This document shows, one piece after another, positions 8,436 to 57,023 of a stretch of 64,000 nucleotides of DNA. The notes beneath the pieces are model-generated. The model searched no databases and had not been told where the DNA came from. It saw nothing but the letters and a program-made list of their open reading frames with translations. The number at the start of each line of letters is the position of its first letter. Within the stretch, counting starts at the first letter, position 1. The stretch covers positions 118,564 through 182,563 of the forward strand of contig CBFFRP010000186.1 in NCBI GenBank assembly GCA_965644295.1, given 5' to 3'. This DNA is from Paraphysomonas bandaiensis (taxonomy: Eukaryota > Protista > Chrysophyceae). A program made the translations under genes and the position numbers.

Positions 8436-10433
8436 ATGTCGTCTAAGGGATTCGATGTGACTCTTTCGAAGGAGATGTTGTTGACTTTCTTCAACATCAC
8501 TCAGTTTGTTAATAAGATCGGGAAGGAAGTGATTCTAGAAGTAGACGAAGAGACGGTACACACACACATACATACATACATAGACATGATATGATAGAGA
8601 CGGTATATGCATATACATACACGTGCATGTGGTGTGTTGATTTGTAAATAGCATCGTTTGTATATACAGTCTGTAGATGTGTGTACGGATAGATGGTGAT
8701 CTAGCTGTACAGGGCTGTGGGTGTAGACCTACAGTGTATACATACATACATGCATACATACATACATGCATACGAGGTGGTTACTTATGGTATAGCGATC
8801 TATCTACCTCTGAATGACTGTGTCCTTGTCTGCGTATATACAGTCTAGCTATAGCTAGAAGTGTTTGGAATTGATGTAGCGTATGTTTTTTGGCAAATGT
8901 AAGGAGTGAATGCAGGTCACTTTACGAGCATTAAACGATGCCAAAAGCGCCTTTGCGAGTGTGGAGTTCACCTCACGTATGAAAAATCCTCTTCTTGAGA
9001 CGGTGCCTCACTGTTATCTGCCGCATGGCGCTATGTGTTGTCAATGTAGAGTGCTTTGATTCATTTTCGTTGAGCTCGTCGGATGGGGAAGCATTTGCTT
9101 GCAAAGTTCCCATAAGGGTATGTTGAAAAGTTTGTATCATTAGTAAATCACGTTGTGTGTAGCCCCTCTGTGTGATTCTCAAAAGTGCGAAGCGGATGCA
9201 GAGTTTGCGGATACATACAAATGTTCAATCTGACGGGGAACATGAGATTATATTCTCCATGAGATGCAGTCACGGTAGGGGGCAGTCATGGTGCTTTGAC
9301 GCTACTAAGCTCTCATGAATGTATATAGGCATTCTTCGTACACATCGGTTTAACTATCAGGACAGTGAAATAGTAAATGCAATGTTCAATGAAGCTGAGT
9401 GCTCCACCTTGCGGTGCCTTCCAAAGGTACGCGTACTTTACATAATCCATGCGATATAGACTATTACTATATGCACAATTCGTTATGTCTGTATAACTAC
9501 CTAGTATGAAGCTGTATACATTCATCGCGTTGTTTGTTATTTTTTCGTAGGTTCTTAGCAATGTGTTCAACCACATTCATAATTGGGCTGGTGAGATTGA
9601 GATCGCAATCGGTCCACGCACCCTCAAAGTGAAGACTTTTCACCAAGATGCTTATAATCAAGCGGCATCCTTGGACAGCAACTCAAAAGCCTTTCTAAGC
9701 AGTGAGATGTTGTTGGACCCTGTACACGAGTTTGAGGTATACGAGTATAAGGAAACGGACGAACAGCAAATTATTATATGCTTCAAAGAGGTGCGTAGAA
9801 GTTTCTACGTTGTGTAGTATGGACACCTCCCATGCCGAAGTAAAATTTTTGAGTGGCTTAATCTAATATTCCGTGCGCAGCTTCGAGCGTTGCTCTGGTT
9901 GTGTGAAGTGTGTGAAATTGAGGTGCTCTCTTTCTTATTAACGCAGGGGGGAAGGTGATGTGAACAGCGCAGTGTTAGTGTAGCTGTATATATGTAGGAG
10001 ACATGCCAATATATCTTGCTTTATATATGCCTACGTACCTACTTTTATGTGTGTATGCAGACCGATTAAATTCAGCTGCGTAATTCCTTTCACTGGAGTT
10101 GATGTAACCCTTGTCATGGCTTCATTTGAGACTCCATCTTCCCAAACAGATACCAGCAGTGACGGTGCTTCTCAACTTCAACCATCTCAAGAAGTGCTCC
10201 TTGATCGCAACTCCCAACCAAATGGTGGAATATTTTCGTCTAATCGATCACAGGCAAGATGTAGCGAAGGCACAGATCAAGACTTAACACAAGATGCATC
10301 TGAATTACGGCCAACGAAAAGACGTCATATAGAGGTGGATGAAGACCGTCATGTAGATTCCTCTAGCGGAGCCCATAGCAGTAGACTGAGGAGAATTATA
10401 TGTGACGACAGTGATGATGATTTTGATGCATGA
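8436..10433 (+). CDS. RAD9: Rad9 checkpoint clamp subunit (9-1-1 complex), multi-exon
   Basis: Spliced exons read MSSKGFDVTLSKEMLLTFFNITQFVNKIGKEVILEVDEET / VTLRALNDAKSAFASVEF ... IIICFKE / LRALLWLCE ... RPIKFSCVIPFTGVDVTLVMAS, then an SQ/TQ-rich acidic tail with an NLS (RPTKRRH). These match Rad9 family motifs. Confidence 0.85.
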
Positions 10434-18362: not shown

Positions 18363-18780
18363 ATGACTTCAATTGACTACTCGAATCACATGTTGGTTAT
18401 TATATAAACATATCATGCATATGCATATGGGGGTGGTTCTTGTGTAAATCGATTTTATATCGTTTTTTTCATTGCAAAGTCCTTATTTTTTATGTGAAAA
18501 GTGACTTTTCAACGAAAAAAAACGACAATCTAATCAATTGCGCACAACCATATCGATATTCATGTAGGACGGGCCGTATGAGGTTCATCTCATGGAACGT
18601 CGAGAATTTCAACAGTTTTTCAAGTGTTTTTAATTAGAATTTTTACAAACCCGGGATTTGGTCTATGAAACAGTTTTTATACAGAAAACATGTACTCTGT
18701 ATGTGTTGATCACTTTTGTATGAGTATACTCTTTTTTGTCCATATGTAATTCCAGGATTTTTTACAGAATGCTATTGTAT
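18363..18780 (+). repeat. Diverged direct repeat upstream of the ankyrin array (partner 30717-31015), containing a decayed foldback MITE (18429-18550)
   Basis: ATGACTTCAATTGA...CATATCATGCAT...TGTAGGAC...TCAAGTGTT...TTAGAATTTTT...CCGGGATTTGGT...GAAACAGTTTTT...TTTTTGTCCAT is shared in order with 30717-31015. Confidence 0.7.
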
Positions 18781-19175: not shown

Positions 19176-22100
19176 ATGGATGATATTATTACAGCTGCTG
19201 AGAGGGGTGATTCCAATGGTGTGAGGGCGTGTGTTGAGAGGGGTGACAACATACATGAACGAGATACGGTAATAACCATACATACATTCCTTCATGCATA
19301 CATACATGCATATGTAGAGTGTTATGAGGGCATGAGCATATGTGATAATTGTTATTGTTTTATAGAGTGACCGCACAGCTCTTCACTGGGCTGCCATTAG
19401 AGGTCACGGAGATGTAGCTGAGTATCTTTTGGGAGAAGGAGCAGATACAAATATACGAGACAATGTAAGTAACTCCTCTATACATACATATATAAGTAGA
19501 GTGTTATGAGGGCTCATATGTGATTGTTTTTATTGTTTTATAGGGTGGCCGTACAGCTCTTAACTGGGCTGTCTCTAATGGTCATAGCGATATAGCTATG
19601 AGTATTTTGGAAGCAGGAGCAAATGCTAATATACGAGACAATGTAAGTAACCCCTCTATACATACAGACATACATACATGCATGCAGTGTTATGAGGGCT
19701 CATATGTGATTATTGTTATTGTTTTATAGAGTGGCCACACAGCTCTTCACTGGGCTGCCATTAGAGGTCACGGAGAAATATCTGAGTATCTTATGGGAGA
19801 AGGAGCAGATACAAATATACGAGACAGTGTAAGTAACCCCTCGATACATACATACATACATAACATAAGTAGAGTGTTATGAGGGCTCATATGTGATTAT
19901 TGTATTTGTTTTATAGGGTGGCCGTACAGCGCTTCACTGGGCTGTTTCTAATGGTCACAGAGATATAGCTATGTATCTTATGAGAGCAGGAGCAGAGACA
20001 ACTATACGAGACAATGTAAGTAACTCCTCTATACATACATGCATGCATACATGCAGTGTTCTGAGGGTTCATATATGATTTGTATGATTGTTTTGTAGGG
20101 TGGTGATACAGCTCTTCACTGGGCTGTCTCTAGAGGCTATACAGAAATAGCAGAGTATCTTATGAGAGCAGGAGCAGATACTAATATACGAAACAATGTA
20201 TGTTACCCTTCTATGCATACATACATACATAAGTAGAGCGCTGTGAGGGCTCATATGTGATTTGTATTATTGTTTTATAGGATGGGCGTACAGCTCTTCA
20301 CTGGGCTGTCTCTAGAGGTTATAAAGAAATAGCAGATTATCTTTTGAGGGCAGGAGCAGATACTAATATACGAAACAATGTATGTAATTCTTCTATACAT
20401 ACATACATACATAAGTAGAGTGTTATGAGGGCTCATATGTGATTTTTTGTATTGTTGTATAGAAAGGTGAGACAGCTCTTCACTGGGCTGCCATTAGAGG
20501 TCACAGAGATGTAGCTGAGTATCTTTTGAGAGCAAGAGCAGATACAACTATACGAGACAATGTAAGTAACTCCTCTAGACATACATAAATACGTGCAGTG
20601 TTATGAGGTCTCATGTGTGATTTGTATTATTGTTTTATAGGGTGGCCGTACAGCTCTTCACGTGGCTATATCTAGAGGTCACAGTGATATATCAGAGTAT
20701 CTTATAAGGGCAGGAGCTGATATTAATGTACGAGACAATGTAAGTAACCCCTCTATACATACATATATACTTAACTATATGGATATATGGTGATGCAGTG
20801 TGTCACTTGCTTTTATGATGCTTCTTGTTACTTTTGCAGGAGGGAAGGACTCCTGTTGATGTGGCTAAGGATAATGCGATGCGTGAGCTCATCAGAAACG
20901 CACATGTTAGTATGTGTACTGTATGCTTCATCGTATTCTCAGAACCAGAGACATAACTTCACTGGAATCATATGTGTATTGTATAGGCTGAGAGGCAGAG
21001 ACAGCAAGAGGAGGACGCTGCTACCGCTGCAGAGGTATGTGTGTAATGATGTAGTTTTATGATATTGATGCAGTTATATGGTATGATATGTTGGAGTGCC
21101 TTGACTGCGACCATATATGTATGTGTATGTTTGGCGGTGCTGTTAAGATGAGTAGCACCCACTTCTATATGTGCTCAAGCTTCCATATGTGCCGCAGATG
21201 ATGAATTCAAACGAGGTGTTCGAACATAAGATGGATGGTATTATTAGAGCTGCTGAGAGGGGTGATATCAATGGTGTGAGGAGGTGTGTTGAGAGGGGCG
21301 ATAACGTACATGAACGAGACGAGGTAACCCACACACATAAACACATACATTCATTCATACGTACATACATAAGTAGAGTGTTATGAGGGCTCCTATGTGA
21401 TAATTGTTATTGTTTTATAGGATGGGCATACAGCTCTTCACTGGGCTGCCATTAGAGGTCACGGAGATGTAGCTGAGTATCTTATGGGAGAAGGAGCAGA
21501 TACAAGAATACGAGACAATGTACGTAACTCCTCTGTACATACATATATACATACATACACACATAAAGTTGAGTGTTATGAGGGCTCATATGTGATTAAT
21601 ATTATTTTTTTATAGGATGGCCGTACATCTCTTCACTGGGCTGTCTCTAGAGGTTATAAAGATATTGTTCAGTATCTTATGTTGGCAGGAGCAGATACTA
21701 ATATACGAGACAATGTAAGTAACCCCTCTATACATACATACATGCAGTGTTATGAGGGCTCATATGTAATTTGTATTATTGTTTCATAGGATGGGCGTAC
21801 AGCTCTTCACTGGGCTGTCTCTAGAGGTTATAAAGAAATAGCAGAGTATCTTTTGAGGGCAGGAGCAGAGACTAATATACGAAACAATGTATGTAATTCT
21901 TCTATACATACATACATACATAAGTAGAGTGTTATGAGGGCTCATATGTGATTTTTTGTATTGTTGTATAGGGTGGCCGTACAGCTCTTCACTGGGCTGC
22001 CATTAGAGGTCACGAAGATGTAACTGAGTATCTTTTGAGAGCAGGAGCAGATACAACTATACGAGACAATGTAAGTAACTCCTATATACATACATACATA

Positions 22101-25100
22101 CATACATACATACATACATACATACATACATACATACATACATACATACATACATACAAACATACATAAATAAGTAGAGTGTTATGAGGTCTCATGTGTG
22201 ATTTGTATTATTGTTTTATAGGGTGGCCGTACAGCTCTTCACGTGGCTATATCTAGAGGTCACAGTGATATATCAGAGTATCTTATATGGGCAGGAGCTG
22301 ATATTAATGTACGAGACAATGTAAGTAACCCCTCTATACATACATATATACTTAACTATATGGATATATGGTGATGCAGTGTGTCACTTGCTTTTATGAT
22401 GCTTCTTGTTATTTTTGCAGGAGGGAAGGACTCCTGTTGATGTGGCTAAGGATAGTGCGATGCGTGAGCTCATCAGAAACGCACATGTTAGTATGTGTAC
22501 TGTATGCTTCATCGTATTCTCAGAACCAGAGACATAACTTCACTGGAATCATATGTGTATTGTATAGGCTGAGAGGCAGAGACAGCAAGAGGAGGACGCT
22601 GCTACCGCTGCAGAGGTATGTGTGTAATGATGTAGTTTTATGATATTGATGCAGTTATATGGTATGATATGTTGGAGTGCCTTGACTGCGACCATATATG
22701 TATGTGTATGTTTGGCGGTGCTGTTAAGATGAGTAGCACCCACTTCTATATGTGCTCAAGCTTCCATATGTGCCGCAGATGATGAATTCGAACGAGGTGT
22801 TCGAACATAAGATGGATGGTATTATTAGAGCTGCTGAGAGGGGTGATATCAATGGTGTGAGGAGGTGTGTTGAGAGGGGCGATAACATACATGAACGAGA
22901 CGAGGTAACCCACACACATAAACACATACATTCATTCATACGTACATACATAAGTAGAGTGTTATGAGGGCTCATATGTGATAATTGTTATTGTTTTATA
23001 GAGTGGCCACACAGCTCTTCACTGGGCTGCCATTAGAGGTCACGGAGATGTAGCTGAGTATCTTATGGGAGCAGGAGCAGATACAAGAATACGAGACAAT
23101 GTAAGTAACCCTTCTATACATACATACATACATACATACATACATACATACATGCATACAGTGCTATGTTGGCTCATATGTGATTGTTATTATTGTTTTA
23201 TAGGATGGCCGTACATCTCTTCACTGGGCTGCCGTTAGAGGTCACAGTAATATATCAGAGTATCTTATGTTGGCAGGAGCAGATACTAATATACGAGACA
23301 ATGTAAGTAACCCCTCTATACATACATACGTGCAGTGTTATGAGGTCTCATGTGTGATTTGTATTTGTTTTATAGGGTGGCCGTACAGCTCTTCACGTGG
23401 CTATATCTAGAGGTCACAGAGATATATCAGAGTATCTTATGTGGGCAGGAGCTGATATTAATGTACGAGACAATGTAAGTAACTCCTCTGTACATACATA
23501 TATACTTAACCATATGGATATGTGGTGATGCAGTGTGTCACTTGCTTTTATAATGCTTCTTGTTACTTTTGCAGGAGGGAAGGACTCCTGTTGATGTGGC
23601 TAAGGATAATGCGATGCGTGAGCTCATCAGAAACGCACATGTTAGTATGTGTACTGTATGCTTCATCGTATTCTCAGAACCAGAGACATAACTTCACTGG
23701 AATCATATGTGTATTGTATAGGCTGAGAGGCAGAGACAGCAAGAGGAGGACGCTGCTACCGCTGCAGAGGTATGTATGTAATGATGTAGTTTTATGATAT
23801 TGATGCAGTTATATAGTATGATATGTTGGAGTGCCTTGACTGCGACCATATATGTATGTGTATGTTTGGCGGTGCTGTTAAGATGAGTAGCACCCACTTC
23901 TATATGTGCTCAAGCTTCCATATGTGTCACAGATGATGAATTCGAACGAGGTGTTCGAACATAAGATGGATGGTATTATTAGAGCTGCTGAGAGGGGTGA
24001 TATCAATGGTGTGAGGAGGTGTGTTGAGAGGGGCGATAACATACATGAACGAGACGAGGTAACCCACACACATAAACACATACATTCATTCATACGTACA
24101 TACATAAGTAGAGTGTTATGAGGGCTCATATGTGAGTTTTTGTATTGTTGTATAGAGTGGTGCTACAGCTCTTCACTGGACTGCCATTAGAGGTCACAGA
24201 GATGTAGCTGAGTATCTTATGGGAGCAGGAGCAGATACAAGAATACGAGACAATGTAAGTAACCCTTCTATACATACATACATACATACATACATGCATA
24301 CAGTGCTATGTTGGCTCATATGTGATTGTTATTATTGTTTTATAGGATGGCCGTACATCTCTTCACTGGGCTACCATTAGAGGTCACAGTGATATATCAG
24401 AGTATCTTATAAGGGCAGGAGCAGATACAACTATACGAGACAATGTAAGTAACTCCTCTAGACATACATAAATACGTGCAGTGTTATGAGGTCTCATATG
24501 TGATTGATATTATTATTTTATAGGATGGCCGTACAGCTCTTCACTGGGCTGCCATTAGAGGTCACGGAGAAATAGCTATGTGTCTTTTGAGAGCAAGAGC
24601 AGATACTAATATACGAGACAATGTAAGTAACTCCTCTATACATATACATACATACGTGCAGTGTTATGAGGTCTCATGTGTGATTTGTATTTGTTTTATA
24701 GGGTGGCCGTACAGCTCTTCACGTGGCTATATCTAGAGGTCACAGAGATATATCAGAGTATCTTATGTGGGCAGGAGCTGATATTAATGTACGAGACAAT
24801 GTAAGTAACTCCTCTGTACATACATATATACTTAACCATATGGATATGTGGTGATGCAGTGTGTCACTTGCTTTTATAATGCTTCTTGTTACTTTTGCAG
24901 GAGGGAAGGACTCCTGTTGATGTGGCTAAGGATAATGCGATGCGTGAGCTCATCAGAAACGCACATGTTAGTATGTGTACTGTATGCTTCATCGTATTCT
25001 CAGAACCAGAGACATAACTTCACTGGAATCATATGTGTATTGTATAGGCTGAGAGGCAGAGACAGCAAGAGGAGGACGCTGCTACCGCTGCAGAGGTATG

Positions 25101-28100
25101 TGTGTAATGATGTAGTTTTATGATATTGATGCAGTTATATGGTATGATATGTTGGAGTGCCTTGACTGCGACCATATATGTATGTGTATGTTTGGCGGTG
25201 CTGTTAAGATGAGTAGCACCCACTTCTATATGTGCTCAAGCTTCCATATGTGCCGCAGATGATGAATTCGAACGAGGTGTTCGAACATAAGATGGATGGT
25301 ATTATTAGAGCTGCTGAGAGGGGTGATATCAATGGTGTGAGGAGGTGTGTTGAGAGGGGCGATAACATACATGAACGAGACGAGGTAACCCACACACATA
25401 AACACATACATTCATTCATACGTACATACATAAGTAGAGTGTTATGAGGGCTCATATGTGATAATTGTTATTGTTTTATAGAGTGGCCACACAGCTCTTC
25501 ACTGGGCTGCCATTAGAGGTCACGGAGATGTAGCTGAGTATCTTATGGGAGCAGGAGCAGATACAAGAATACGAGACAATGTAAGTAACCCTTCTATACA
25601 TACATACATACATACATACATACATACATACATACATACATACATGCATACAGTGCTATGTTGGCTCATATGTGATTGTTATTATTGTTTTATAGGATGG
25701 CCGTACATCTCTTCACTGGGCTGCCGTTAGAGGTCACAGTAATATATCAGAGTATCTTATGTTGGCAGGAGCAGATACTAATATACGAGACAATGTAAGT
25801 AACCCCTCTATACATACATACGTGCAGTGTTATGAGGTCTCATGTGTGATTTGTATTTGTTTTATAGGGTGGCCGTACAGCTCTTCACGTGGCTATATCT
25901 AGAGGTCACAGAGATATATCAGAGTATCTTATGTGGGCAGGAGCTGATATTAATGTACGAGACAATGTAAGTAACTCCTCTGTACATACATATATACTTA
26001 ACCATATGGATATGTGGTGATGCAGTGTGTCACTTGCTTTTATAATGCTTCTTGTTACTTTTGCAGGAGGGAAGGACTCCTGTTGATGTGGCTAAGGATA
26101 ATGCGATGCGTGAGCTCATCAGAAACGCACATGTTAGTATGTGTACTGTATGCTTCATCGTATTCTCAGAACCAGAGACATAACTTCACTGGAATCATAT
26201 GTGTATTGTATAGGCTGAGAGGCAGAGACAGCAAGAGGAGGACGCTGCTACCGCTGCAGAGGTATGTATGTAATGATGTAGTTTTATGATATTGATGCAG
26301 TTATATAGTATGATATGTTGGAGTGCCTTGACTGCGACCATATATGTATGTGTATGTTTGGCGGTGCTGTTAAGATGAGTAGCACCCACTTCTATATGTG
26401 CTCAAGCTTCCATATGTGTCACAGATGATGAATTCGAACGAGGTGTTCGAACATAAGATGGATGGTATTATTAGAGCTGCTGAGAGGGGTGATATCAATG
26501 GTGTGAGGAGGTGTGTTGAGAGGGGCGATAACATACATGAACGAGACGAGGTAACCCACACACATAAACACATACATTCTCATTCATACGTACATACATA
26601 AGTAGAGTGTTATGAGGGCTCATATGTGAGTTTTTGTATTGTTGTATAGAGTGGTGCTACAGCTCTTCACTGGACTGCCATTAGAGGTCACAGAGATGTA
26701 GCTGAGTATCTTATGGGAGCAGGAGCAGATACAAGAATACGGGACAATGTAAGTAACCCCTCTATACATACATACCTACATAAAGTAGAGTGTTATGAGG
26801 GTTCATATGTTTTGATAATTGTTATTGTTTTATAGGATGGCCACACAGCTCTTCACTGGGCTACCATTAGAGGTCACGAAGATGTAGCTGAGTATCTTAT
26901 AAGGGCAGGAGCAGATACAACTATACGAGACAATGTACGTAACTCCTCTATACAAACATACATACATACATACATAAATAGAGTGTTATGAGGACTTTTA
27001 TGCAATTTGTATTATTGTTTTATAGGGTGGCCGTACAGCTCTTCACTGGGCTGCCATTAATGGTCACGAAGATGTAGCTGAGTATCTTTTGAGAGCAGGA
27101 GCAGATACAACTATACGAGACAATGTAAGTAACTCCTCTAGACATATACATACATACATACAAACATACATGAGTAGAGTGTTATGAGGGTTCAGATGTG
27201 ATTTTTATTATTGTTTTATAGGGTGGCCGTACAGCTCTTCACTGGGCTGTCTCTAATGGTTATAGAGATATAGCTATGCATCTTTTGGGAGAAGGAGCAG
27301 ATACAAGTATACGGGACAATGTAAGTAAATCCTCTATAGATACATACATACATATATACATACATACATAAAGTAGAGTGTTATGAGGGCTCGTATGTGA
27401 CTTGTATTATTGTTTTATAGGATGGGCGTACAGCTCTTCACTGGGCTGTCTCTAAGGGTTATAACGATATAGTTCAGTGTTTATTTTTTTGGGCAGGAGC
27501 AGATACAAGAATACGGGACAATGTAAGTAACCCCTCTATACATACATACCTACATAGAGTAGAGTGTCATGATGGCTCATATGTGATTTTTATTATTGTT
27601 TTATAGGATGGCCGTACAGCTCTTCACTGGGCTGCCATTAGAGGTCACGGAGATGTAGCAGAGTATCTTTTAAGAGATGGAGGAGATACTAATATACGAG
27701 ACAGTGTAAGTAACTCATACATACATACATACATACATACATAAGTTGAGTGTTATGAGGGCTCATATGTGATTTGTATTATTGTTTCATAGGATGGCCG
27801 AACAGCTCTTCATTGGGCTGCCATTAGAGGCTATAGAGATGTAGTTGAGTATCTTATGTTGGCAGTAGCAGATACTAATATACAAAACAATGTAAGTAAC
27901 CACTCTATACATACATACATAAATATATATATACGTGCAGTGTTATGAGGGCTCATATGTGATTGATATTATTATTTTATAGGATGGGCGTACAGCTCTT
28001 CACTGGGCTGCCATTAGAGGTCACGGAGAAATAGCTATGTGTCTTTTGAGAGCAAGAGCAGATACTAATATACGAGACAATGTAAGTAACTCCTCTATAC

Positions 28101-30730
28101 ATATACATACATACGTGCAGTGTTATGAGGTCTCATGTGTGATTTGTATTTGTTTTATAGGGTGGCCGTACAGCTCTTCACGTGGCTATATCTAGAGGTC
28201 ACAGAGATATATCAGAGTATCTTATGTGGGCAGGAGCTGATATTAATGTACGAGACAATGTAAGTAACTCCTCTGTACATACATATATACTTAACCATAT
28301 GGATATGTGGTGATGCAGTGTGTCACTTGCTTTTATAATGCTTCTTGTTACTTTTGCAGGAGGGAAGGACTCCTGTTGATGTGGCTAAGGATAATGCGAT
28401 GCGTGAGCTCATCAGAAACGCACATGTTAGTATGTGTACTGTATGCTTCATCGTATTCTCAGAACCAGAGACATAACTTCACTGGAATCATATGTGTATT
28501 GTATAGGCTGAGAGGCAGAGACAGCAAGAGGAGGACGCTGCTACCGCTGCAGAGGTATGTGTGTAATGATGTAGTTTTATGATATTGATGCAGTTATATG
28601 GTATGATATGTTGGAGTGCCTTGACTGCGACCATATATGTATGTGTATGTTTGGCGGTGCTGTTAAGATGAGTAGCACCCACTTCTATATGTGCTCAAGC
28701 TTCCATATGTGCCGCAGATGATGAATTCGAACGAGGTGTTCGAACATAAGATGGATGGTATTATTAGAGCTGCTGAGAGGGGTGATATCAATGGTGTGAG
28801 GAGGTGTGTTGAGAGGGGCGATAACATACATGAACGAGACGAGGTAACCCACACACATAAACACATACATTACCATTCATACGTACATACATAAGTAGAG
28901 TGTTATGAGGGTTCATATGTTTTGATAATTGTTATTGTTTTATAGAGTGGCCACACAGCTCTTCACTGGGCTGCCATTAGAGGTCACGGAGATGTAGCTG
29001 AGTATCTTATGGGAGAAGGAGCAGATACAAATATACGAGACAATGTAAGTAACCCCTCTATACATACATACATACATACATACATACATAGGTTGAGTGT
29101 TATGAGAGCTCGTATGTGATTTGTATTATTGTTTTATAGGATGGCCGTACAGCTCTTCGCTATGCTGTTTCTTATGGTTATAGAGATATAGCTATGTATC
29201 TTATGAGAGCAGGAGCAGATACTAATATACGAGACAATGTAAGTAACTCCTCCGTACATACATACATACATACATACATATATGAATGCAGTGCTATGCG
29301 GGCTCCTATGTGATAATTGTTATTGTTTCATAGAGTGACCGCACAGCTCTTCACTGGGCTGCGATTAGAGGTCACGGAGATATAGCTGAGTATCTTTTGA
29401 GAGAAGGAGCAGATACTAATATACGATACAGTGTAAGTAACTCCTCTATACATACATACATACATACATACATACATACATACATACATACATACATACA
29501 TACAACATACATGCATACATACATACATAAGTAGAGTGTTATGAGGGCTCATGTGTGATTTTATTATTGTTTTATAGGATGGGCGTACAGCTCTTCACTA
29601 TGCTGTCTCTAATGGTTATAGAGATATAGCTATGTATCTTATGAGAGCAGGAGCAGACACTAATATACGAGGCAATGTAAGTAACTCCTCTATACATACT
29701 AACATACATACATACATACATACATACATACATACATGAATGCAGTGCTATGTGGGATCATATGTGATTGTTATTATTGTTTTATAGGATGGGCTTACAG
29801 CTCTTCACTGGGCTGTCTCTAGAGGTTATAGAGATATAGCTATGTATCTTTTGAGAGCAGGAGCAGACACTAATATACGAGGCAATGTAAGTAACTCCGC
29901 TATACATACAAACATACATACATACATACATACATGAATGCAGTGCTATGTGGGATCATATGTGATTGTTATTATTGTTTTATAGGATGGGCGTACAGCT
30001 CTTCACTGGGCTGTCTCTAGAGGTTATAGAGATATAGCTATGTATCTTCTGAGAGCAGGAGCAGATACAAGAATACGAGACAATGTAAGTAACCCCTCTA
30101 TACATACATACATGAATCATACATAAGTAGAGTGTTATGAGGGCTCATATGTGATTGTTATTATTGTTTCACAGAATGGTGAGACAGCTCTTCACTGGGC
30201 TGCCATTAGAGGTCACAGAGATGTATCTGAGTATCTTATGGGAGAAGGAGCAGATACTAATATACGAGACAATGTAAGTAACTCCTCTATACATACATAC
30301 ATACATACATACATACATACGTGCAGTGTTATGAGGTCTCATGTGTAATTTGTATTTGTTTTATAGGGTGGCCGTACAGCTCTTCACGTGGCTATATCTA
30401 GAGGTCACAGAGATATATCAGAGTATCTTATAAGGGCAGGAGCAGATATTAATGTACGAGACAATGTAAGTAACCCCTCTAGACATATGGATATGTGGTG
30501 ATGCAGTGTGTCACTTCCTTTTATGATGCTTCTTGTTATTTTTGCAGGAGGGAAGGACTCCTGTTGATGTGGCTAAGGATAATGCGATGCGTGAGCTCAT
30601 CAGAAACGCACATGTTAGTATGTGTACTGTATGCTTCATCGTATTCTCAGAACCAGAGACATAACTTCACTGGAATCATATGTGTATTGTATAGGCTGAG
30701 AGGCAGAGACAGCAAGATGACTTCAATTGA
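19176..30730 (+). CDS. Modular ankyrin-repeat locus: 7 tandem N-cap/ANKn/C-cap/linker modules, 40 single-repeat exons (about 1865 aa if spliced as one mRNA)
   Basis: Modules 19176-21034, 21198-22615, 22779-23769, 23933-25095, 25259-26261, 26425-28554 and 28718-30730 carry 8, 5, 3, 4, 3, 9 and 8 internal exons. Each exon is 99 nt (one is 102 nt), phase 0, consensus [33 protein letters not shown]. No stops seen in the exons; terminal exon [11 protein letters not shown]. Confidence 0.92.
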
Positions 30731-31015
30731 ATACTATCAGACGTGTTGTTGAATTGGAAGTTGGTTGTTTACACACATATCATGCATCTGTATATTCATG
30801 TCTGAATGTAGGACATGCTATGCTGGTCATCGGAGTAGTATGTCGGAGAGAATGTCAAGTGTTATAAATTAGAATTTTTAAAAATCCGGGATTTGGTATA
30901 ACGAAACAGTTTTTCTCTATAGAAATCATGTTTTGATTACACTTTAGCATAAAGTATACTACTGTATTTCTTTTTGTCCATTATGCAATTCCTGAATTTT
31001 TACAGAGTGTTGATG
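30717..31015 (+). repeat. Diverged direct repeat downstream of the ankyrin array; supplies the stop codon
   Basis: The linker exon breaks at CAGCAAG|ATGACTTCAATTGA; the sequence is homologous to 18363-18780. Confidence 0.7.
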
Positions 31016-31174: not shown

Positions 31175-33270
31175 TGTTGAGCTCTGCAATATGATGTGAT
31201 ATATATTGTGCAATTGAAGTGAGTTAACAGTGTGCAATAGGTAAAGTCAACTCATAGGTGTAACGGGCGATTATAGGCACAAAGGAATTAAATTCAGTAC
31301 TGATGTGTGACTATACAAGATATAGATCTGACTGATGAACATATGATAAACAGATGTTGCTGAGGACAGATGTTTCAACATATGTTACACGAATATGTAG
31401 TGAAGTGTTCAGAATAATAGTTATAATTTCTTACTTGAAAGTGCGTTGTGTTTAACATATAGCAAGGTTAAGGTTACATGTAGAGCAAAGTTAACTTCAG
31501 TAAAATGTCCAATTCCAACATGGTAGCGAGTGGTAGCTCTGATGAGGCGAAGGAGGACAGCAAGGTGTTGAAGTTTGACAAGTGAAACGACACGTGTGTT
31601 GTAACGATTTGGGAGGAATGTGAACGTGACGCAGATGTATTGGAGGGTGCCAACCGATGCATGGAGGCGACTACCAGATGATGATCCCAACAAGGAAGTT
31701 TTGCCCAATGAAATGCTTCAAACGCTGGTGGATAGGTTTAGGAGTGAGTTGGGAGTAATACTCCAAAAGACTACGCAAAATACCAGCTTGTAAATATTGG
31801 CCAATGATATGGTCGAAATAGATATTGATTGACTGAAATGTATTTTCTTCTAAAACTGACTTCTACACTGAGCAGCAGAGCAGTGGAGCTTTTCATAGTT
31901 AACGAGCAGAGAGTGCTAAGACATACACATGAACAGAGACAGAGAGTTCATCGGCGGAATGGCGCTAATATGTAGATGATGATGTCTCATCTGGAGGGGA
32001 GTCCAACATGATAAATGGTGAAGTGCTTATGACTGAAACAGTAGACAAACGAGTGTATCTAGACAGTTGTGCCGGAAAGCAGCTATTCATGGTTGAAGAT
32101 CATAGAGTGCTAGAGAAATATTATGAAGCAGAGCCAGGAGTCATATCTCTGACGAAGAAGGGGTCAGCAATGGAGACTCAAGGAGTAGGAAACTTTCAAC
32201 ACTGGCAAAAGAGAAGGCATCAAAGTATGTGAATATGCCGTGAAGAATATTGTCTCAGGCGGAATGCTGCGGGCACTGGTGTGTGGATTGGAACTACTTA
32301 GAGTACCGAGAATTGTAGAGTTAAACACTGGTAGAGAGGTGCTGGCTGGAGACTATGATGAGCATGGAGGAATGCCATGGGAGGCACTATATAATATTAT
32401 GACGTTTTGAATTCGCCAATTATTACGTCATCGTGCCATCATGTAATGGAGGAAAATGCCAAGGAGGGAAGTAAAGTTAGTGGATGTTGCCTTATGAGTG
32501 TGTTTCTGGGAGGAAAGGTGCCCGAGTTATCCTGGTTGAGGAAATGGGGGTGCAAGGCGTATGTATTAGTCCCGAAGGCCGATAGACGGAAAGACTGGGA
32601 GGAAAAGGCACAAACAGGATATTTTGTGGGTTTCCCAGATGAGCAGATGGGGTATCAAGTGTTGATAGAAGATATAATAGTCACGTCTGTTCATGTCCTG
32701 TTTGATGTATCGGTGCCCGAGAGATCGGCTGATTACTACCGAGAAATACACTATAAGCCACTACGGTGGCAGTGGTTCCTCAGAGAGGAGTGTTATCGAC
32801 AAAACCCATGTGAAGATGGCGGCCAACTGTACAACAAGACCACGCGAATATAGATTCGGAAAGAGGTCTAAATGTGGGATATAGATTCCTGATGTCAGGT
32901 GGTGAGGAGCAACTGGTAGTTAAGACTCCTATTCACATCAACGCGGATGAGTGAAGACCTTGTGACAAGAGTATCTGCTAGTTCTGGATCTCGTGACGAC
33001 GGAACCAGCGGACATTTATTACAGCAGTTGACTGGGACGGTTCCATCCCCTTCTGACTTCGTAATTGCTCCGGGAGAGGAAGCTCCATCAGATCGCTCAA
33101 CTAGGGGCAGGCGCACAAGGGCTCCAATGGTGGTGACGAATGTGTCAGTAGTAGGTGAGAAGCACGTATTACCTTCATGTAACGAAGTGGAGTGCAGCCT
33201 ACTAGAGGAGGCAGATTCCATCTGGTGCTCGTCAGCGGGACCTACGTCGTAAGGTGCCTCAGACATATAA
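31175..33270 (+). pseudogene. Degenerate Ty1/Copia element (relative of 35299-37035)
   Basis: Possible TGTTGA...TCAACA LTR (31175-31380). Broken gag (TIWEECERDADVLE), protease VYLDSCAG, and integrase C-terminal region (WLRKWGCKAYV...GYFVGF) with stops and deletions. Confidence 0.8.
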
Positions 33271-33465
33271 CAGCGATATTTGACGAAAAAAAACCGTAAG
33301 CGAGAGAAAGCAGAGAAGCGAATAATGCTTAATTATGAGCTGATCAACAAACACACATGCAACATCAGACTAACGAAATGACTCCAAGGGCAAAAATCAG
33401 TCATAACTCTATACGATACTGTATATCATGTATGACTCAGTATGCAAGACATGACTGTATACTCT

Positions 33466-33638
33466 GGGGGTGGTTGTGCATATCGATTTCATCGATTTGT
33501 TCATCGTTTATTTCATCGAAAAATCATCGTTTTTTCATTAAAAAGTCACTTTTTTTCACTTTTCACTGAAAAAACGATGATTTTTCGATGAAATAAACGA
33601 TGAACAAATCGATGAAATCGATATGCACAACCACCCCC
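33466..33638. mobile_element. Foldback MITE with perfect 72-bp inverted arms
   Basis: GGGGGTGGTTGTGCATATCG...TTTTTTCA / TGAAAAAA...CGATATGCACAACCACCCCC with a 29-bp spacer. Confidence 0.9.
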
Positions 33639-34099
33639 TGTACTGTATACCACTGTACTGTATACCACTGTACTCCTGTACAGTGTACTGCAGTACCGTG
33701 TACTACCGTACGCAGGATATCACAATCCAAGTGCCTCCCTATATCCTAGCGTGCGCAAGGATACAGTGCAGTACAAGTCGTCACATGTGAAGATCAACTT
33801 CAACAATACCTAAACGTTTATAACGAAAACCCAAATATGCTCATCATTAAGGGAAAAATAAAATAACGCAGGTATATATATATATTGTAATCACGAGAAT
33901 ATACTGTATGTATGAATAGACGCACGAGATCAACGGGCAGACCGTTTACATCAATTACGCTCCCGTCTAAGTATACCATTTCAAATATAGATAATAATAT
34001 GATGGTATATAATGCACTTTACAAACATAGCACTCAAATACTTAAGTATGTAGTATAATATATCAATCCCTTTAAGTATGACATCAAACACTCAATCAC

Positions 34100-35290
34100 A
34101 AACCACCGAAGTTTCTCTTAAAAAAACGGTTAGCAAGGGATTTAGTGAATAGATCAGTCAGATTTTCCTCATAGTAGAAATATATTGGAAATCCACAATC
34201 CCACTCGCGAATAATCGTCTAATAGAAAATTGATGTCGTATCGCCATATGTGCTATCTTTGATCTCATGTTGTTAGCAATGTGCTTCATTCTCCTCTGAA
34301 AATACATAAAATTTTGGCCAACTTAATCGCTGACGTGTTATCAATATGAATAATTGTAGGTTTATCACCTTTAATTTCTCTGTCACATTCTTGTTAGCGA
34401 TAACTCTCTTGATATATTATGTCTCTCTCAATGACATTAATTTCTTATGGCATCTTAGCTTAATACTCGGAATCCTTCGGTGAAAATAAATCGAAATCTT
34501 TTAATTCGGACTTTGACACAATCGTAGTCCATTCAGTATCACAATAGGCACTAATAATTGACACTGCTTCAGATTGTTTCATGAAAGGAATATGGAGATC
34601 TATATAATTCACCCAATATTTGAAAAATGTTCACAATTACACCCCAGTATTGCCTGTCAGAGTTAGATAACAAACTAACAACTGAACATATAACAAATAT
34701 AATATATCTTGTTGCATACATACCATTTTAAACCCAATTTTCAATGTGCTCATCTTAGAAACGATATTCTCCATTCATATAATCATTGTCATCATCATTT
34801 CTCAAAGAAAATGGAATAATAACTGTAGTACTCATAATAATATATAGTATAGTACTAATATATATCGAGATCAACATACAGTTCGTTCACTCATAACTAA
34901 CTGCTCCTACTATCAGCAAGTATATTTCTAGAACTAGACATAAGTCTTAAGAAGTAAGCATATGCACTGAAAGCTTATGTCACAAAGATATATGAGACAA
35001 ATTTTTAGCTTCTACCTACTAGCCGTTTTACTATACCGTTAAGATAAGTGAAAGTGAACAGTTCAAAATTCGTGATTTTTACACTTACAAAATATGGCCC
35101 TAATCCATATCACCATTCCTGTGAATAGTGAAGTGTACAGCCACCTCAGATGGGTTCTGTATATCTTCCATTTCTTTTTCAGACATAAACTTAGGGTTAT
35201 TTGCTAGTATATTCTCTCAAATGTCATCGTCAGGTACAGTTACATTGTCATACACACCACCCAACAAATTATCCTGTCTGAGCCAGATAT
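34100..35290 (-). pseudogene. Highly decayed Copia RT/RNase H remnant
   Basis: Minus-strand GDKPTIIHIDNTSAIKLAK and ENLTDLFTKSL motifs of Ty1-type RNase H, with stops. Confidence 0.6.
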
Positions 35291-35298
35291 TCATACAA

Positions 35299-37035
35299 TC
35301 ATGCGCATGTCTCCAGAAACCTGACTGCGCTTAGCTCTTCGTTGTCCCGTGATTTGAACGAATGCCTGGTTATCTTTGCCTTGGCACACCATTTACACAG
35401 GGGTTTCTTGCAACTCTTCTCCTTTGCCTTCGAAAGGTGATGTCGTTGTAGTCCTGATCCTCTGAATAACATGTGTCGGTGAGCTTCTAATAACTTCGAT
35501 TTCGAGACATGTCCAGTACGCTCATGTAAGCGATCCAACGCATCTTGTCCTGTATTATCCGACAAATTTACCTCCTCCATCTGATTGCACATAGACACAT
35601 TTGGCAGATTTAACACCTCCATCAAGTCCACATACGGCATTCCTCCATGCTCATCGTACTCTCCAGTCAACACCTCGTTTCCAGAGTCCAATTCCACGAT
35701 TTTAGGCTTTCGAAGCAGTTGTAATCCGTATCCCATTGATCTCAGCATTCCTCCTGACACAATGTTCTTCACCGCTTCTTCACTAACTCTGATGTCTCTC
35801 CATTCCCCGAATGTACCAGCCCCCTGTGTCTCCAATTGAGAACCCTTTCTAGTTAGTTGGATTGCCCCAAACTCAGGAGTAAATGACTCCAGTGCAATTT
35901 TATCCTTTACTATAAACAGTCTTTTACTTGCACAACTGTCCAGATATACACGAGGTTCTTCCGACGTATCCACCGATAGCAAAACCTCTTCTCCAAACAT
36001 ATTCGCTTCATCATCCGACGACTCTCCGTCGTTGACGTATTTCTTCCATTCTGTCTCGAATTTCCTGTTCGATTTTCGAGGATTCTCATTATCCGGGTTT
36101 TTTATGTTCTTCCGTTTTTTCGACTTGCACTGTCGGGCTTTATGACTAAAATCTCCACAGATATGACAACCAGTATAATCCTTTGATCCTGGCTGCTGCA
36201 CACTCTTCGAAGCCTTTTCCTTTGTCTTCCCTTTTCTTTTGAACTTATCCATTTTTCTTTGTCGTTCCTTAGCATAACAATTCGCTGCTACGTGTCCCTT
36301 CTTCCGACAAAATGAACAAACCACTGGCTCCTTCGACGCCGTAAAATTGATCTCTTCAGATTTGTCTCCCTTTAGTTTCTTCAGCTGCGTCATAGCCTCG
36401 TCATACTCTTCACAAGCCTCTTTCACCGAATCAAATGTAGTTGTTGCTTTAGGCATCATCGCTACCGACATCCATAAATCATGTAATTCCTCTATCTGCA
36501 GCGCTGCTTTTATCTTTGCTAATTTACTTGCCTCTGTCTGCGGTTGTCCCAATTTTATGAGCTTCTGGATTATACCGTTCAGTCGATCTACCCCAACAGA
36601 CACCTTTTCCCCCGGCCTTATTTTGAACGAATGGTATTCTGCCGTAGTCTTCTCCAATACAGTCCCAATCTCGCCTCTGAACCTATCAACCAGTGTCTGA
36701 AGGAGCTCACTGGATAACACCTCCTTAGCAGGATCATCAGCAGGTAAAATTGCCTTCCCCTCCAAATATTGATTGGCTACCTCCAACACATCAGGGTCAT
36801 GCTCGCAAGCCTCCCAAATAGTACTAACACAGGTATCATTACGCTCTCTCCATGACTCTAAATTCCTTCCTCCGGCTGGCGGGTCCTCCAAGCCAAGATG
36901 GTTTCGGTTTTTCTTCATTAGATGCATCTTGATTTTTCTCGCTGAATAGTCTGCTTGGTTCTTGTCAAACCGTAGCTTCTTGTCATCTTCCCCATCCCTA
37001 CAACTAGCATTCGCTACCATAACAGAAGTTGACAT
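35299..37035 (-). mobile_element. Ty1/Copia gag-protease-GAG-pre-integrase ORF, truncated at the integrase
   Basis: Two CCHC knuckles (CSFCRKKGHVAANC, CHICGDFSHKARQC), protease VYLDSCAS, LHERTGH...CKWCAKAK. Confidence 0.9.
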
Positions 37036-37817
37036 TATTTGCTAAGGTTTACTATTCTCAACTGATAAGATGAAATTATAAACATTACATGATAAAGAAC
37101 CTAAGTTGTGTTCGATGTGTTCAACACCATTCATTTACTACTATAGTGTACAAACCACCCACTCAGTGATCGTATCCTGTATAGTCATCCACTTCTACTT
37201 CAGTTTCATACTACATAATATAATGTACTAATTACATATATATCTTTCGATCCTTGCATCTCACATAATACTGCACTCAATTGCAAGTATATAGAATCTT
37301 CAGATCTCAACATTTGGTATTTCATTGTATATGTGTGTTGTATTCACGCGTTAAGAGATATACGTGAATCAATGACTCCTAATAAGATCAATGCAACTTT
37401 TCTGCACATACTCTACTACTATTGTAATGAAATACACATACACGCCTATTGTATTGTTAAGTTTATATTTTGACCTAAAAATATGACGGTGATAGGACAA
37501 TGATATAGGCAACAGGCAATCGAGCACAGTGTTATAAGTGGACGGTATTGTCATAAGGAAACGACCTTAACATTAGCAAGGGTACTTCATCATCACTATT
37601 ATTATCCGCAATTACCTCAAAGCAATTATATCAAAATTCTTAAGCGAACCGAGCAATAACCATATTGGCATTTACATATCTAAGAAAAATCACCGACATC
37701 CAATTGATAGCTACTGATTCACCATTGAAAAATCTTAAACCTTGTATACTTTATAGGAAATATCTGTGAGCTGAGTGCACGTCACGAGACAACTGAGAAA
37801 TGAGTGCGAGTTAAGCT

Positions 37818-38348
37818 TTAATTGAACTGGGGGCGAAGTTGTAGTCTCCACTCAACTTCATCTCTGAAATCCAATGCTCGACCGGGGATATTCAAGTCGG
37901 TACTCGGTACGCTCTGAAGAAGCCGAGTTGCTGCAAGAGGGTTGCGACAATAGTCACCCCCAGCATTTTTATTGGAATTTTGAAACCGATTCTTATAGAG
38001 ACCGGTAAATGTGTCAATCTTTGAAAGTCGTTGTTGGGCTGGATTACAAAGGTCACCAGCTTGTACACCCTTTACCTGTACCATGGTGAGAACACGAATA
38101 TATTGAAATAGTGTCTCACCTCATGAGGCAGGTATGAAGGGAGCTCTTTGTACTTCACAGCTCGCACTGGGGGTCTACTTTTGGAGGAAATTGGGGCCAG
38201 TTGACGAACTTTCCGCTTACGGTTCTGAGCTCCCTGGCGCTCACTATAGGCCTGTCCGATCTCTTCACGATCTATAGCCGCGCGGTACTATAAAACACAG
38301 TGACATCACATTTCTATATAATAGCATGCGAGTTACCTTATGGCTCAT
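37818..38348 (-). CDS. Hypothetical protein, 3 exons
   Basis: MSHK / YRAAIDREEIGQAY...YLPHE / VQVKGVQAG...EWRLQLRPQFN* joined through canonical GT-AG introns. Confidence 0.55.
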
Positions 38349-40244
38349 TCTTACTACAAATCAAACTCTAATCAATGTGCAGGAAATAACACTGAGAAGG
38401 GGTTCAAAGCGTCGTTCGGTCTACTCCATTGATTGATATCGCAGTGGTGTATCAGTGAGAATGTTAGACGTTAATGGAGTAAGATACAGAGGGAGTTATC
38501 TGGCGAAACTATCTATCGTTCTCTCCATACCCCACTAAATGTTCCGTTCGGCAAGTTACGTATGTATATGTACAGCACAGTACATACTCTAGCAGTATAT
38601 GGAGAGTTCTGTATGTAGAATGTAGTAGTATATTCTTCATAGCTAATTTACGTAGAGAATACATCATATACAACCCGCCTACATCGTGTGCTTATATTAT
38701 AGAAGTCGTTATACACTTGAAGTCTCACAAAAATTTCATACATCTTTACCTGTTTTTTGTGGTGGGTAAGGCTAAAAACAGGGGATTTTAACTGTTTTCT
38801 TCTAGAAAAAAGAGGTATTGGGTATTGGTACCTATACCTGCTGTATGTCGTACGTATGCACACAGTTCTTCGTAGTATGTGAACTCTGTCACGGTTTCAG
38901 AGATTGTTGTCCCTTAAGGACACACTTATATCGATGCAATTATAATAATCATTATAAAAGTAATCTACAACAAAACCATTGTGGTGCTCGTAAAAAAGGG
39001 AACGGTTTATAACTATAGTTCTACTTGGACGGGAGTGACGGGATCTGTCATCATTTCTGGTATGGCAACGAACTTTGACTCGCTATCAACCAAATTAAAT
39101 TACAGTGTGCGCTTTGATAAAAATTATACATTAAATAGACGTTTTATTACAATCACCGAAATGCCCTATCTTTATTAGTTGAATTACATGTTTCGAAGCT
39201 GAATTCTTTGAATAATCTAAACGATTATCAATAGTACTTTACCTTGTATATCAACAAAGTTTTAAAATATCTCCAATAATTTACGATCCGTATTAATATA
39301 TTAACATACTGTAACGCGTATGGTAAATCCATACTGAATTCAACCTTCAGACATCAGGAATTTTTTAATCAACCCTCTTGACTATATAGCTATAATATCG
39401 AAAACTGAAGTAATTTACCATGACGATTCAAGATGCGGAAGTTGAGTAGTGGTTGACATGAAATAAATTATCATGTTGTTGACATGTTTTACATGATAAC
39501 ACACACAATTGTGTATGCAATATAATAAAGTGTCTACCTAGTTTGATTACTATTAGGATTCAGCTTAATACATGATTGTATCTGTGAGTTATAATGTTCA
39601 ATGAAATATACCATGAACTGAATTAGAGAGAGTATCTGTCGAAGATACGTAATCGTCATCATAACGTCGTCATTATCAGTTACACTTCTAACTATTCCGT
39701 TGTGCATGATAGTACGTTCTATAGTGTTATTCATAATTTTCACTCTATCGTGTTCATTACTTACACTCTAATAATCACAACATTGTTTTACTATTATAAA
39801 GATCAATTCTTTATTATTACAAAAAACTTCTCTTAATGATCTTAATTTTGAAAATGACCAATAGGCAATACCGTAGTTATATCTAATACTCTTGGTAATT
39901 GGCATGCGAGCTACTACCTAGCAGACTAAATCGTAAATCTATTACTGGATACTGTCTTGAGGGCTGTCAACACACTATCCCGGGCTTGAACAAAACCACA
40001 TATCTGAACTACGCTATTCGTTTTAACACAATGGGGTTGCACGGTTGCATATATCATATATTTAGAACTGCGCCATCTAATTCGTTATTATAATACGACG
40101 AATAGATTCCGGATGCTACATGCTACTATCTTCTGATCGATAATGGAAACTCGACTTTTGAAGTACAAGCACATGCTGCCTCGCTATCTAGAGTCCATAG
40201 CATCGACAGTCTACATACAACCCGGATTTGTACATATAATTACA

Positions 40245-43835: not shown

Positions 43836-44530
43836 CTTGTGTACTGCTGTGTTATAGGAACAGTAAAGTATGGGGCTGTCTATATATGTGTACTGATGTA
43901 TGTATCATCGCTATATATCTAGCCTACAGAAACCTCATACTGTACATTATATTCCATAGAGCATGTACTGTAGCTGTAGTAGAGGGAATACCGGAATACA
44001 GGCATCTTTTTTAGAAGGATAAAAAGTACCAATATATATTCCAATATTTTTATGTTGAACTACAACTTGAACACATACATTCTACAGAAATCGATAGAAA
44101 ATCCATATTTTTCTATACATTTTCCAGATATTTCAGTCATCGGTTGTGAAGAGGTGGGTGGATGGGATTTATAGAGTTTCTAATACATGGCCTTGAATAT
44201 ATCCGCTAGATTCCATACGTTATATACATGTGTATGTCCATATAGGTATGTATGTGTACGTAGTCTATATGTATGTATGTATGTATGTGTATGTGTATGT
44301 GTATGTATGTATGTGTATGTATGTATAGGAGTGGACTCCTAGAGCACCACTCACAACTCCCATAAGCCACAACAACATACCAATACACTCATCTTTCCAT
44401 CCCCCATCCTCATTGAATGTATCTCTAGTATAATGTATGGTCAACACACCTCTGAAGTCGATCTAGGTATACATACACACACATATGCATACATATCTGA
44501 CTGTTGTTGTGTATATATACAGATAACTGC

Positions 44531-55550: not shown

Positions 55551-55904
55551 CACACACAGAGAGGCGGAGGGCCGAGGGGTCGCTCTAAGCCGCTTAGGCA
55601 TTCTTCCTGAGCCAGAAAGGCTCTCGTATCGTAATAAAACTTCGTTTTATTACTCTTTCCTTTTCACTCAATCTTTCTTCCTTTTCACTCTATCTTTAAA
55701 TATAATTATTATGGCCTATATAATTATATTAATAATACTATACTTTAAATAAAAATTAATTACTTTATATAATATTAAATAATTATCTTATAATAATATT
55801 AATAATACTATACTTTAAATAAATATTAATAATACTATACTTTAAATAAAAATTAATTACTTTATATAATATTAAATAATTATCTTATAATAAAATAAAA
55901 ATAT

Positions 55905-56273: not shown

Positions 56274-56598
56274 GACCCCTTCCATCAATTTATAGGCGAT
56301 AGCACTTACTGAAAATTGGTGGGAGCACATACCGAAAGAAGGGTGGTTCAGTCAAAGGTTTTGGCAAGTGTCAACAACTGCAAAGCGTTTTTCGAAGTCG
56401 ATTTCTAAGGTCCCTCACTTGTGAAATTAACCAACATTGAATAATCCGTGGGTGTGAATCCGCGTGACGTACGAGTGTCACAGAATCCCCTACCATAATT
56501 TGTGTGGGTGACACAGAATTACAAGATCGCAATTTACCCGGAAAATAAATTCGTTTAATTTCCTCGGATTATTTTCTTAACTATAATAAAAACAAAAT

Positions 56599-56958: not shown

Positions 56959-57023
56959 AACGTGAGAAATATACCCGGAAAATAAATTCAGATTATTTTT
57001 TCTTAACTATAATAAAAACAAAT

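What the first reader, a model, noticed from the sequence alone, without database searches (positions are those of the whole stretch)
19176..30730. Natural DARPin-like library: one ankyrin repeat per symmetric exon, in 7 capped modules of variable length
Seen: 40 phase-0 exons each encode exactly one ankyrin repeat (33 aa; one is 34 aa). They are grouped into modules of N-cap exon, 8/5/3/4/3/9/8 repeats, C-cap exon ([22 protein letters not shown]) and helical linker ([16 protein letters not shown]). Caps are nearly invariant, internal exons differ, and I found no stops or frameshifts. Known: this is the cap-repeat-cap layout of ankyrin binders, and one-repeat-per-exon shuffling is described for LRR-ROCO and NB-ARC-TPR genes of the brown alga Ectocarpus. 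Inference: a combinatorial recognition system, possibly for intracellular immunity, in which any exon can be gained, lost, swapped or skipped without breaking frame.
Basis: partly seen in the sequence, partly recalled or inferred. Interest (0 to 1): 0.92.

Follow-up and report, generated by a model that had tools for sequence, protein, structure and literature searches.

The report
Seven-domain exon-per-repeat ankyrin binder gene
A marine chrysophyte protist has fused seven small ankyrin binding domains, each built one repeat per exon, into one spliced gene with no enzyme part; it is an unusually uniform member of a fast-diversifying, probably defensive family whose other members carry a kinase, ADP-ribosyltransferase or ubiquitin-ligase domain, and its target is unknown.

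Summary
In detail: 40 phase-0 ankyrin exons in seven capped modules (8/5/3/4/3/9/8), 61 exons, one open frame of 1,865 aa. The joint between modules is spliced in two metatranscriptomes and present in two other data sets, so it is neither an artefact nor seven separate genes. The host is a Paraphysomonas-like chrysophyte. About 25 other loci use the same exon kit but hold one module, ending in a kinase, PARP-like, RING or zinc-finger domain, or nothing; these ends appear to be exchanged. Family-wide, the binding face is hypervariable (pN/pS about 2.8). This locus is not: its groove is mostly Arg/Trp/Arg (pN/pS 1.0-1.2, not significant), modules 3 and 5 are twins, and exon skipping is not shown. 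So it is a recently amplified, effector-less, multivalent binder rather than a library. It arose when the first eight codons of a SAM-kinase exon fused in frame to an N-cap. A defence role is inferred. The design is known from brown algae, Tetrahymena and fungi, and this scan already found such arrays elsewhere in this genome; the seven-domain build and the PARP-like ends are additions.

The parts
19176..21034 (+). Module 1: N-cap exon 19176-19268 from the start ATG (preceded by the family's CACTT-rich leader), 8 ANK exons 19366-20739, C-cap 20840-20905, charged helical linker 20987-21034
21035..21230 (+). Inter-module joint (6 copies, 0-6 differences in 484 nt): a 163-nt intron and the first 8 codons of the SAM exon of the SAM-kinase paralogues, fused at about 21221-21228 to the 5' end of an N-cap. 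Found only at this locus in the genome search
   Evidence: spliced in RNA
21198..22615 (+). Module 2: 126-nt N-cap exon, 5 ANK exons, C-cap, linker; M2.2 (21616-21714) is a mosaic exon
22779..23769 (+). Module 3: 3 ANK exons; twin of module 5
23933..25095 (+). Module 4: 4 ANK exons; shares its first and last two repeats with module 6 (1 substitution at each end); M4.2 is a mosaic
25259..26261 (+). Module 5: 3 ANK exons; 0 substitutions against module 3, one 12-nt microsatellite difference
26425..28554 (+). Module 6: 9 ANK exons, including the 102-nt (34-aa) exon 27421-27522
28718..30730 (+). Module 7: 8 ANK exons, C-cap 30548-30613, terminal linker exon 30695-30730 with the stop codon; no effector domain follows. 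The 3' end is shared with the paralogue on contig C5 (L001, 94%)

Best explanation
One expressed gene for a cytosolic polyprotein of seven ankyrin domains (N-cap, 3-9 repeats, C-cap), spaced by charged helical linkers and lacking a catalytic domain. It is a derived member of a family of sensor-effector proteins: ANK array, linker, then kinase, PARP-like, RING or zinc-finger domain. Shown: exon structure, splicing across modules, paralogue architectures, binding-face hypervariability in the family. Inferred history: an ANK gene carrying the intron and start of a SAM-kinase exon broke after 8 codons and joined an N-cap in frame; unequal crossing-over then multiplied the unit and, with gene conversion, changed repeat number and made mosaic exons. 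Diversity is generated at the DNA level. Inferred function: the family recognises fast-changing foreign ligands (most plausibly viral or parasite proteins) and answers by phosphorylation, ADP-ribosylation or ubiquitination. This member, with seven similar Arg/Trp-rich grooves and no enzyme, most likely binds one repetitive target by avidity, as a trap, decoy or adaptor.
For: Linker-to-N-cap splice of 163 nt (GT..AG) in two RNA studies (X9 depth 88.5; X12), plus five neighbouring-exon splices in X9; the joint is in unspliced form in X5 (613 nt, no substitutions) and X6 (11 substitutions in 298 nt). The joint's two halves match SAM-kinase loci and N-caps separately; only this locus holds both. 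Paralogue ends: kinase, PARP and RING over Pfam cut-off, SAM weak. C-cap tree mixes effector classes: RING with SAM-kinase 99/95, kinase with PARP 99/96. Two outside sequences join other C-cap types to the PARP exon (X9 record 22; P0155). Family binding-face pN/pS 2.8-2.9, p about 1e-32 on 89 disjoint pairs; 168 distinct faces in 178 exons. No stop among 88 variants (3.0 expected, P 0.045), no frameshift, all splice sites intact.
Against: No ligand, infection data or protein evidence. At this locus pN/pS is about 1 overall, which also fits relaxed selection. RNA data are short contigs from wild mixed samples: they show pairs of joined exons, not one transcript with seven modules. The module count is not independently verified. 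Pairwise counts are disturbed by gene conversion, so p-values are optimistic. Contigs that join other caps to PARP could be mis-assembled. No signal peptide or localisation tool was run; 'cytosolic' rests on the visible lack of a hydrophobic leader.
Confidence: 0.5

Rival explanations
1. Nearly neutral runaway amplification: an effector-less by-product of a recombination-prone family, still transcribed, kept in frame only because it is young and its exons are symmetric; it may serve as a reservoir of exons.
For: pN/pS about 1.0 on both binding and other sites at this locus; spacers differ by 0-6 of 484 nt; several paralogues are broken or truncated (L001 lacks an N-cap, L004, L005, L010 and L015 carry stops); transposon-rich flanks.
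Against: ANK exons differ by 18% on average with no stop or frameshift; core positions T6, L8, G15 are invariant; the fusion exists in a 96%-identical lineage (X6) and is spliced in wild RNA.
Confidence: 0.27
2. One reading: a combinatorial library in which exon skipping or somatic rearrangement yields many binders from this locus.
For: All exons are phase 0; one X9 joint skips 858 nt (26748 to 27607, depth 26.4) beside the neighbouring joint (19.7); alternative splicing of LRR exons is reported for Ectocarpus ROCO genes (PMC11378527).
Against: That joint rests on 23 nt that several exons share and comes from a mixed population, so a different allele order explains it equally. The exons have similar binding faces (21 distinct of 34; W at 30 of 39, R at 33 of 39), so skipping would add little diversity. 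No recombinase or signal was found.
Confidence: 0.12
3. A non-immune multivalent scaffold, for example in silica-scale formation, by analogy to diatom dAnk proteins.
For: Uniform binding face and no enzyme; ankyrin proteins shape silica pores in diatoms (PMC9894196); Paraphysomonas makes silica scales (own knowledge).
Against: No homology to dAnk was tested or found; the family shows rapid birth, death and diversifying change, unlike a structural gene; the gene is young.
Confidence: 0.07
4. Seven separate mini-genes, or an assembly artefact.
For: Each internal N-cap exon has in-frame ATGs; a retained C-cap intron would stop translation after one module and is seen in two shallow contigs; modules 3 and 5 are identical.
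Against: Internal modules lack the family's 5' leader; the linker-to-N-cap splice is the deepest joint seen; the joint occurs in four outside data sets; spacers fall into distinct haplotypes.
Confidence: 0.04

Closest known systems
Ectocarpus LRR-ROCO and NB-ARC-TPR genes (PMC3341825; PMC11378527)
   Same: One repeat per symmetric exon, exon shuffling, diversifying selection on the binding face (in the family), candidate intracellular immune receptors in a stramenopile; repeat-only loci proposed as reservoirs.
   Different: Ankyrin, not LRR or TPR; no ROC-COR or NB-ARC; several unrelated effector ends; seven complete capped domains in one gene.
Fungal NLRs with highly conserved ANK repeats (PMC4986451)
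   Same: ANK repeats with high internal identity, repeat-number variation, positive selection on the concave face, combinatorial effector domains.
   Different: No NACHT or NB-ARC; sensor is N-terminal; repeats are separated by introns; this locus has no effector and no selection signal.
Tetrahymena 90-bp-exon LRR genes (PMC6564038)
   Same: Arrays of equal-length single-phase exons expanded by unequal crossing-over in a phagotrophic protist.
   Different: LRR, phase 2, thousands of genes; here ANK, phase 0, tens of loci.
Multi-domain DARPins (PMC8683736)
   Same: N-cap, 33-aa internal repeats, C-cap; several domains on one chain.
   Different: Engineered; each domain selected for a different target. 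Here natural, and the seven faces are similar.

Membership tests
Ankyrin repeat (PF00023) | 33-aa repeat scoring over the Pfam cut-off | tested here: met
   32.1 and 34.5 bits against 21.1 for two single exons
DARPin-like library | Dedicated N- and C-terminal capping units around internal repeats | tested here: met
   Distinct first and last exons in all 7 modules and in paralogues; that they seal the core was not modelled
DARPin-like library | Variation concentrated at paratope positions, this locus | tested here: not met
   Entropy 0.97 vs 0.78; pN/pS 1.0-1.2, p 0.28-0.54 on 17 disjoint pairs (1.8-1.9 over all pairs, which are not independent). Position numbering from own knowledge
DARPin-like library | Variation concentrated at paratope positions, whole family | tested here: met
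   Entropy 2.59 vs 0.88; pN/pS 2.8-2.9
Ectocarpus-type exon-shuffling receptors | One repeat per equal-length symmetric exon | tested here: met
Ectocarpus-type exon-shuffling receptors | Exon gain, loss and exchange between copies | tested here: met
   Module 4 vs 6; mosaic exons; a two-repeat variant of the L020/L021 gene in L030
Ectocarpus-type exon-shuffling receptors | ROC-COR or NB-ARC signalling domain | tested here: not met
   The gene ends in a stop after the last linker; paralogue ends are kinase, PARP, RING
Ectocarpus-type exon-shuffling receptors | Alternative splicing of repeat exons | tested here: inconclusive
   One skip joint with a 23-nt anchor in a mixed sample
Fungal NLR with HiC ANK repeats | Central NACHT or NB-ARC domain | tested here: not met
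   None in the gene or in the paralogue ends scanned
Fungal NLR with HiC ANK repeats | High internal conservation (over 85% over 100 aa) | tested here: met
   Modules 3 and 5 identical over 179 aa
Immune receptor (functional) | Binds a pathogen ligand or responds to infection | not testable with these tools
   No data

The most novel reading that the evidence does not exclude
Chrysophytes run a NOD-less, NLR-like surveillance system in which exon-cassette ankyrin sensors are swapped among kinase, mono-ADP-ribosyltransferase and E3-ligase ends, and this locus is its natural multivalent DARPin: a seven-arm, enzyme-free binder of a repetitive foreign structure such as a viral capsid, possibly varied further within a clone by exon skipping.
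Probability: 0.2. Interest if true: 0.8.

Novelty: new variant of a known kind. Interest (0 to 1): 0.52.

Why it matters
Immunity in free-living protists is poorly known. This family gives a testable candidate: a hypervariable ankyrin sensor joined to three kinds of enzymes used in animal and plant defence, with signs that the ends are exchanged. The locus itself records how a new multidomain gene arises (a borrowed splice acceptor, in-frame fusion, tandem amplification, exon gain and conversion), and it is a natural counterpart of engineered multi-DARPin chains. It also warns that a one-repeat-per-exon array is not by itself a diversity generator: this one is close to monospecific.

Tried and rejected
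Library at this locus: rejected by entropy and pN/pS. Seven separate genes: rejected by RNA joints and missing leaders. Patatin as an effector: the patatin ORF near L019 lies behind a stop and is a neighbour, not a fusion. A 17-nt micro-exon in the joint intron: would break the frame, and RNA skips the whole 163 nt. Four-gamete test: 197 of 595 site pairs incompatible but no rise with distance (p 0.69), so it adds nothing beyond the mosaic exons. 18S search failed; actin loci could not be cut out, so the taxon rests on one neighbouring gene. N-cap search of 1.84 billion proteins: generic ankyrins and one family fragment, P0150. SAM-kinase search: one distant hit. Paper searches found no description of this family.

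Full report
Observation. From the ATG at 19176 to the stop at 30730 there are 61 exons: 7 N-caps, 40 ANK exons (39 of 99 nt, one of 102 nt), 7 C-caps and 7 linkers, in modules of 8/5/3/4/3/9/8. All 60 introns (73-163 nt) are GT..AG and phase 0, and the joined frame is 1,865 aa with one terminal stop. Single exons are complete Pfam ankyrin repeats. The 40 repeats give 33 distinct peptides; mean DNA identity is 82%.

Organism. The genome is 62.6 Mb in 669 contigs. A neighbouring KH-domain gene (44504-46618) is closest to Paraphysomonas (85% over the region searched), so the host is a Paraphysomonas-like chrysophyte; this rests on one gene. Runs holding the stretch include marine metatranscriptomes.

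One gene, and real. Laying four runs on 24850-30840 shows the 163-nt linker-to-N-cap intron removed in two independent RNA studies (X9, depth 88.5; X12, one contig running linker, N-cap, first repeat), and N-cap-to-repeat and repeat-to-repeat splices at the predicted sites. The unspliced joint is present in X5 (613 nt, no substitutions; it may be the same strain) and in X6 (11 substitutions and 3 gaps in 298 nt, a different lineage). Internal modules lack the CACTT-rich leader found before most true start codons of the family. These are short contigs from mixed samples: they prove joints between neighbouring modules, not a seven-module transcript or the module count. One joint skips 858 nt, but its 23-nt anchor is not unique, so exon skipping is not shown.

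A family. Exons and caps match many other contigs (lower bounds). In 29 fetched stretches, about 25 genes, I found 196 further ANK exons; every complete gene has one module: N-cap, 1-23 repeats, C-cap, 1-10 linker exons. What follows the linker differs: SAM plus kinase (L018, L023, L024; broken in L009; SAM only weak in Pfam), a 1,000-aa kinase exon (L012, L014, L016, L017), a PARP-like domain (L013, L022, L027; nearest named relatives PARP12-like at 30%), a C3HC4 RING (L025, L026, L028; broken in L010), a Cys-rich domain that looks RBR-like by eye but has no Pfam hit (L021), or a stop (window, L001-L004, L019). A tree of the C-cap region mixes these classes with strong support in two places. 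Two outside sequences point the same way: an X9 contig joins a window-type C-cap and linker (2 differences in 145 nt; this genome's PARP loci differ by 17-22) to the PARP exon, and P0155 joins a C-cap of the SAM-kinase/RING type to PARP. Either could be mis-assembled, but together with the tree they indicate exchange of ends.

Origin of the array. The six internal joints consist of the intron and first eight codons of the SAM exon of the SAM-kinase paralogues, joined at about 21221-21228 to the 5' end of an N-cap; only this locus holds both halves. The C-cap and the 3' end group with the effector-less paralogue L001 (100/96). After the fusion the unit was amplified recently: spacers differ by 0-6 of 484 nt, modules 3 and 5 have no substitution in 1,154 nt, and modules 4 and 6 differ by one substitution at each end yet hold 4 and 9 repeats. 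M2.2 equals M3.2 except for a tract at nt 29-55, and M4.2 is a patchwork whose 3' half equals M6.2. These are the marks of unequal crossing-over and gene conversion through near-identical introns (inference).

Is it a library? Using the six DARPin-randomised positions plus repeat position 10 (numbering from own knowledge), the 178 distinct family exons show entropy 2.59 bits against 0.88 elsewhere, 168 distinct faces, and pN/pS 2.8-2.9 on 89 disjoint closest pairs (p about 1e-32, optimistic because of conversion). The 34 distinct window exons show 0.97 against 0.78 bits, 21 faces, and pN/pS 1.0-1.2 (p 0.28-0.54); six paralogues of 9-21 exons each have higher binding-face entropy (1.2-1.9). The window groove is mostly Arg/His, Trp, Ile/Ser, Arg. 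So the family is library-like and this locus is its most uniform member among those compared. Evidence that it is kept functional is moderate: no stop among 88 variants (3.0 expected, P 0.045), no frameshift, intact splice sites and invariant core residues, but overall pN/pS near 1.

How it most likely works. Family (inferred): the ankyrin array binds a variable foreign ligand, a charged helix spaces it from an enzyme, and the enzyme phosphorylates, ADP-ribosylates or ubiquitinates. This locus (inferred, about 0.5): seven similar domains on helical spacers and no enzyme bind one repetitive target by avidity, as a trap, decoy or adaptor. Rivals: a nearly neutral amplified by-product or exon reservoir (0.27), a splice-generated library (0.12), a non-immune scaffold (0.07), separate genes or artefact (0.04).

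Comparison. It works like the Ectocarpus LRR-ROCO and NB-ARC-TPR genes (one repeat per exon, shuffling, selection on the binding face; PMC3341825, PMC11378527), the Tetrahymena 90-bp-exon LRR genes (PMC6564038) and fungal NLRs with conserved ANK repeats and combinatorial effectors (PMC4986451). It is a member of none: no ROC-COR, NB-ARC or NACHT, and a different repeat or exon structure. Several capped domains on one chain resemble engineered multi-DARPins (PMC8683736). Three paper searches found no account of this family. This scan had already noted one-exon-per-repeat ankyrin arrays, some with kinase or RBR-type ends, on other pieces of this genome; I did not test whether those are the same family. 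Not met in those notes, as far as the look-ups show: the fusion origin, the RNA proof of the joint, the lack of hypervariability here, and the PARP-like ends.

Left out. The joined spliced protein was not searched or folded; exons were searched one by one.

Verdict. Interest 0.52.

Noticed in passing
G000:C461 (L020 and L021): An N-cap with three repeats (near 8,600-9,600) and a last repeat with C-cap, seven linkers and a Cys-rich end (near 37,600-40,200) lie 28 kb apart. Contig L030 from an outside sample joins the two types in a two-repeat gene, so a large insertion may have split one gene.
   Followed up: partly
L030:1123-2043: Partly spliced contig: introns around the ANK exons are retained while C-cap and linker exons are joined, confirming those splices in a paralogue.
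   Followed up: partly
window:24967-25047 (C-cap to linker intron): In-frame 81-nt intron with a GTTAGT donor, retained in two shallow RNA contigs; retention would stop translation 16 codons after a C-cap and give a shorter protein.
   Followed up: partly
introns before ANK exons: A palindrome ATGAG-NN-CTCAT lies about 25-40 nt before the acceptor in 23 of 40 window introns and 45 of 196 family introns; meaning unknown.
   Followed up: partly
L012, L014, L021, L023, L024, L028: The linker exons form their own tandem arrays (up to 10 copies) of phase-0 charged-helix exons, so spacer length also varies by exon number.
   Followed up: partly
window:55551-58294: AT-rich, virus-like cassette with two tandem related small ORFs (about 56580-56930 and 56955-57443) inside a retrotransposon gag region; a similar AT-rich stretch follows L004. 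Observed only.
   Followed up: no
window:2756-4261 (-): ORF with about 60 copies of an 18-nt Gly-X-Asp collagen-like unit.
   Followed up: no
window:33466-33638: 81-nt inverted repeat, 98% complementary, with partial copies near 18460-18520; probably a MITE.
   Followed up: no
window:11585-14968, 32400-37035, 53845-55752, 59511-63449: LTR-retrotransposon ORFs (gag, protease, RT, integrase by eye) flank the gene on both sides.
   Followed up: no
L003 and L007; L018 and L023: Pairs 99.6-99.9% identical over 1.5-2.8 kb of flank; L018 and L023 differ in ANK and linker exon number and order. Possibly alleles or very recent duplicates.
   Followed up: no
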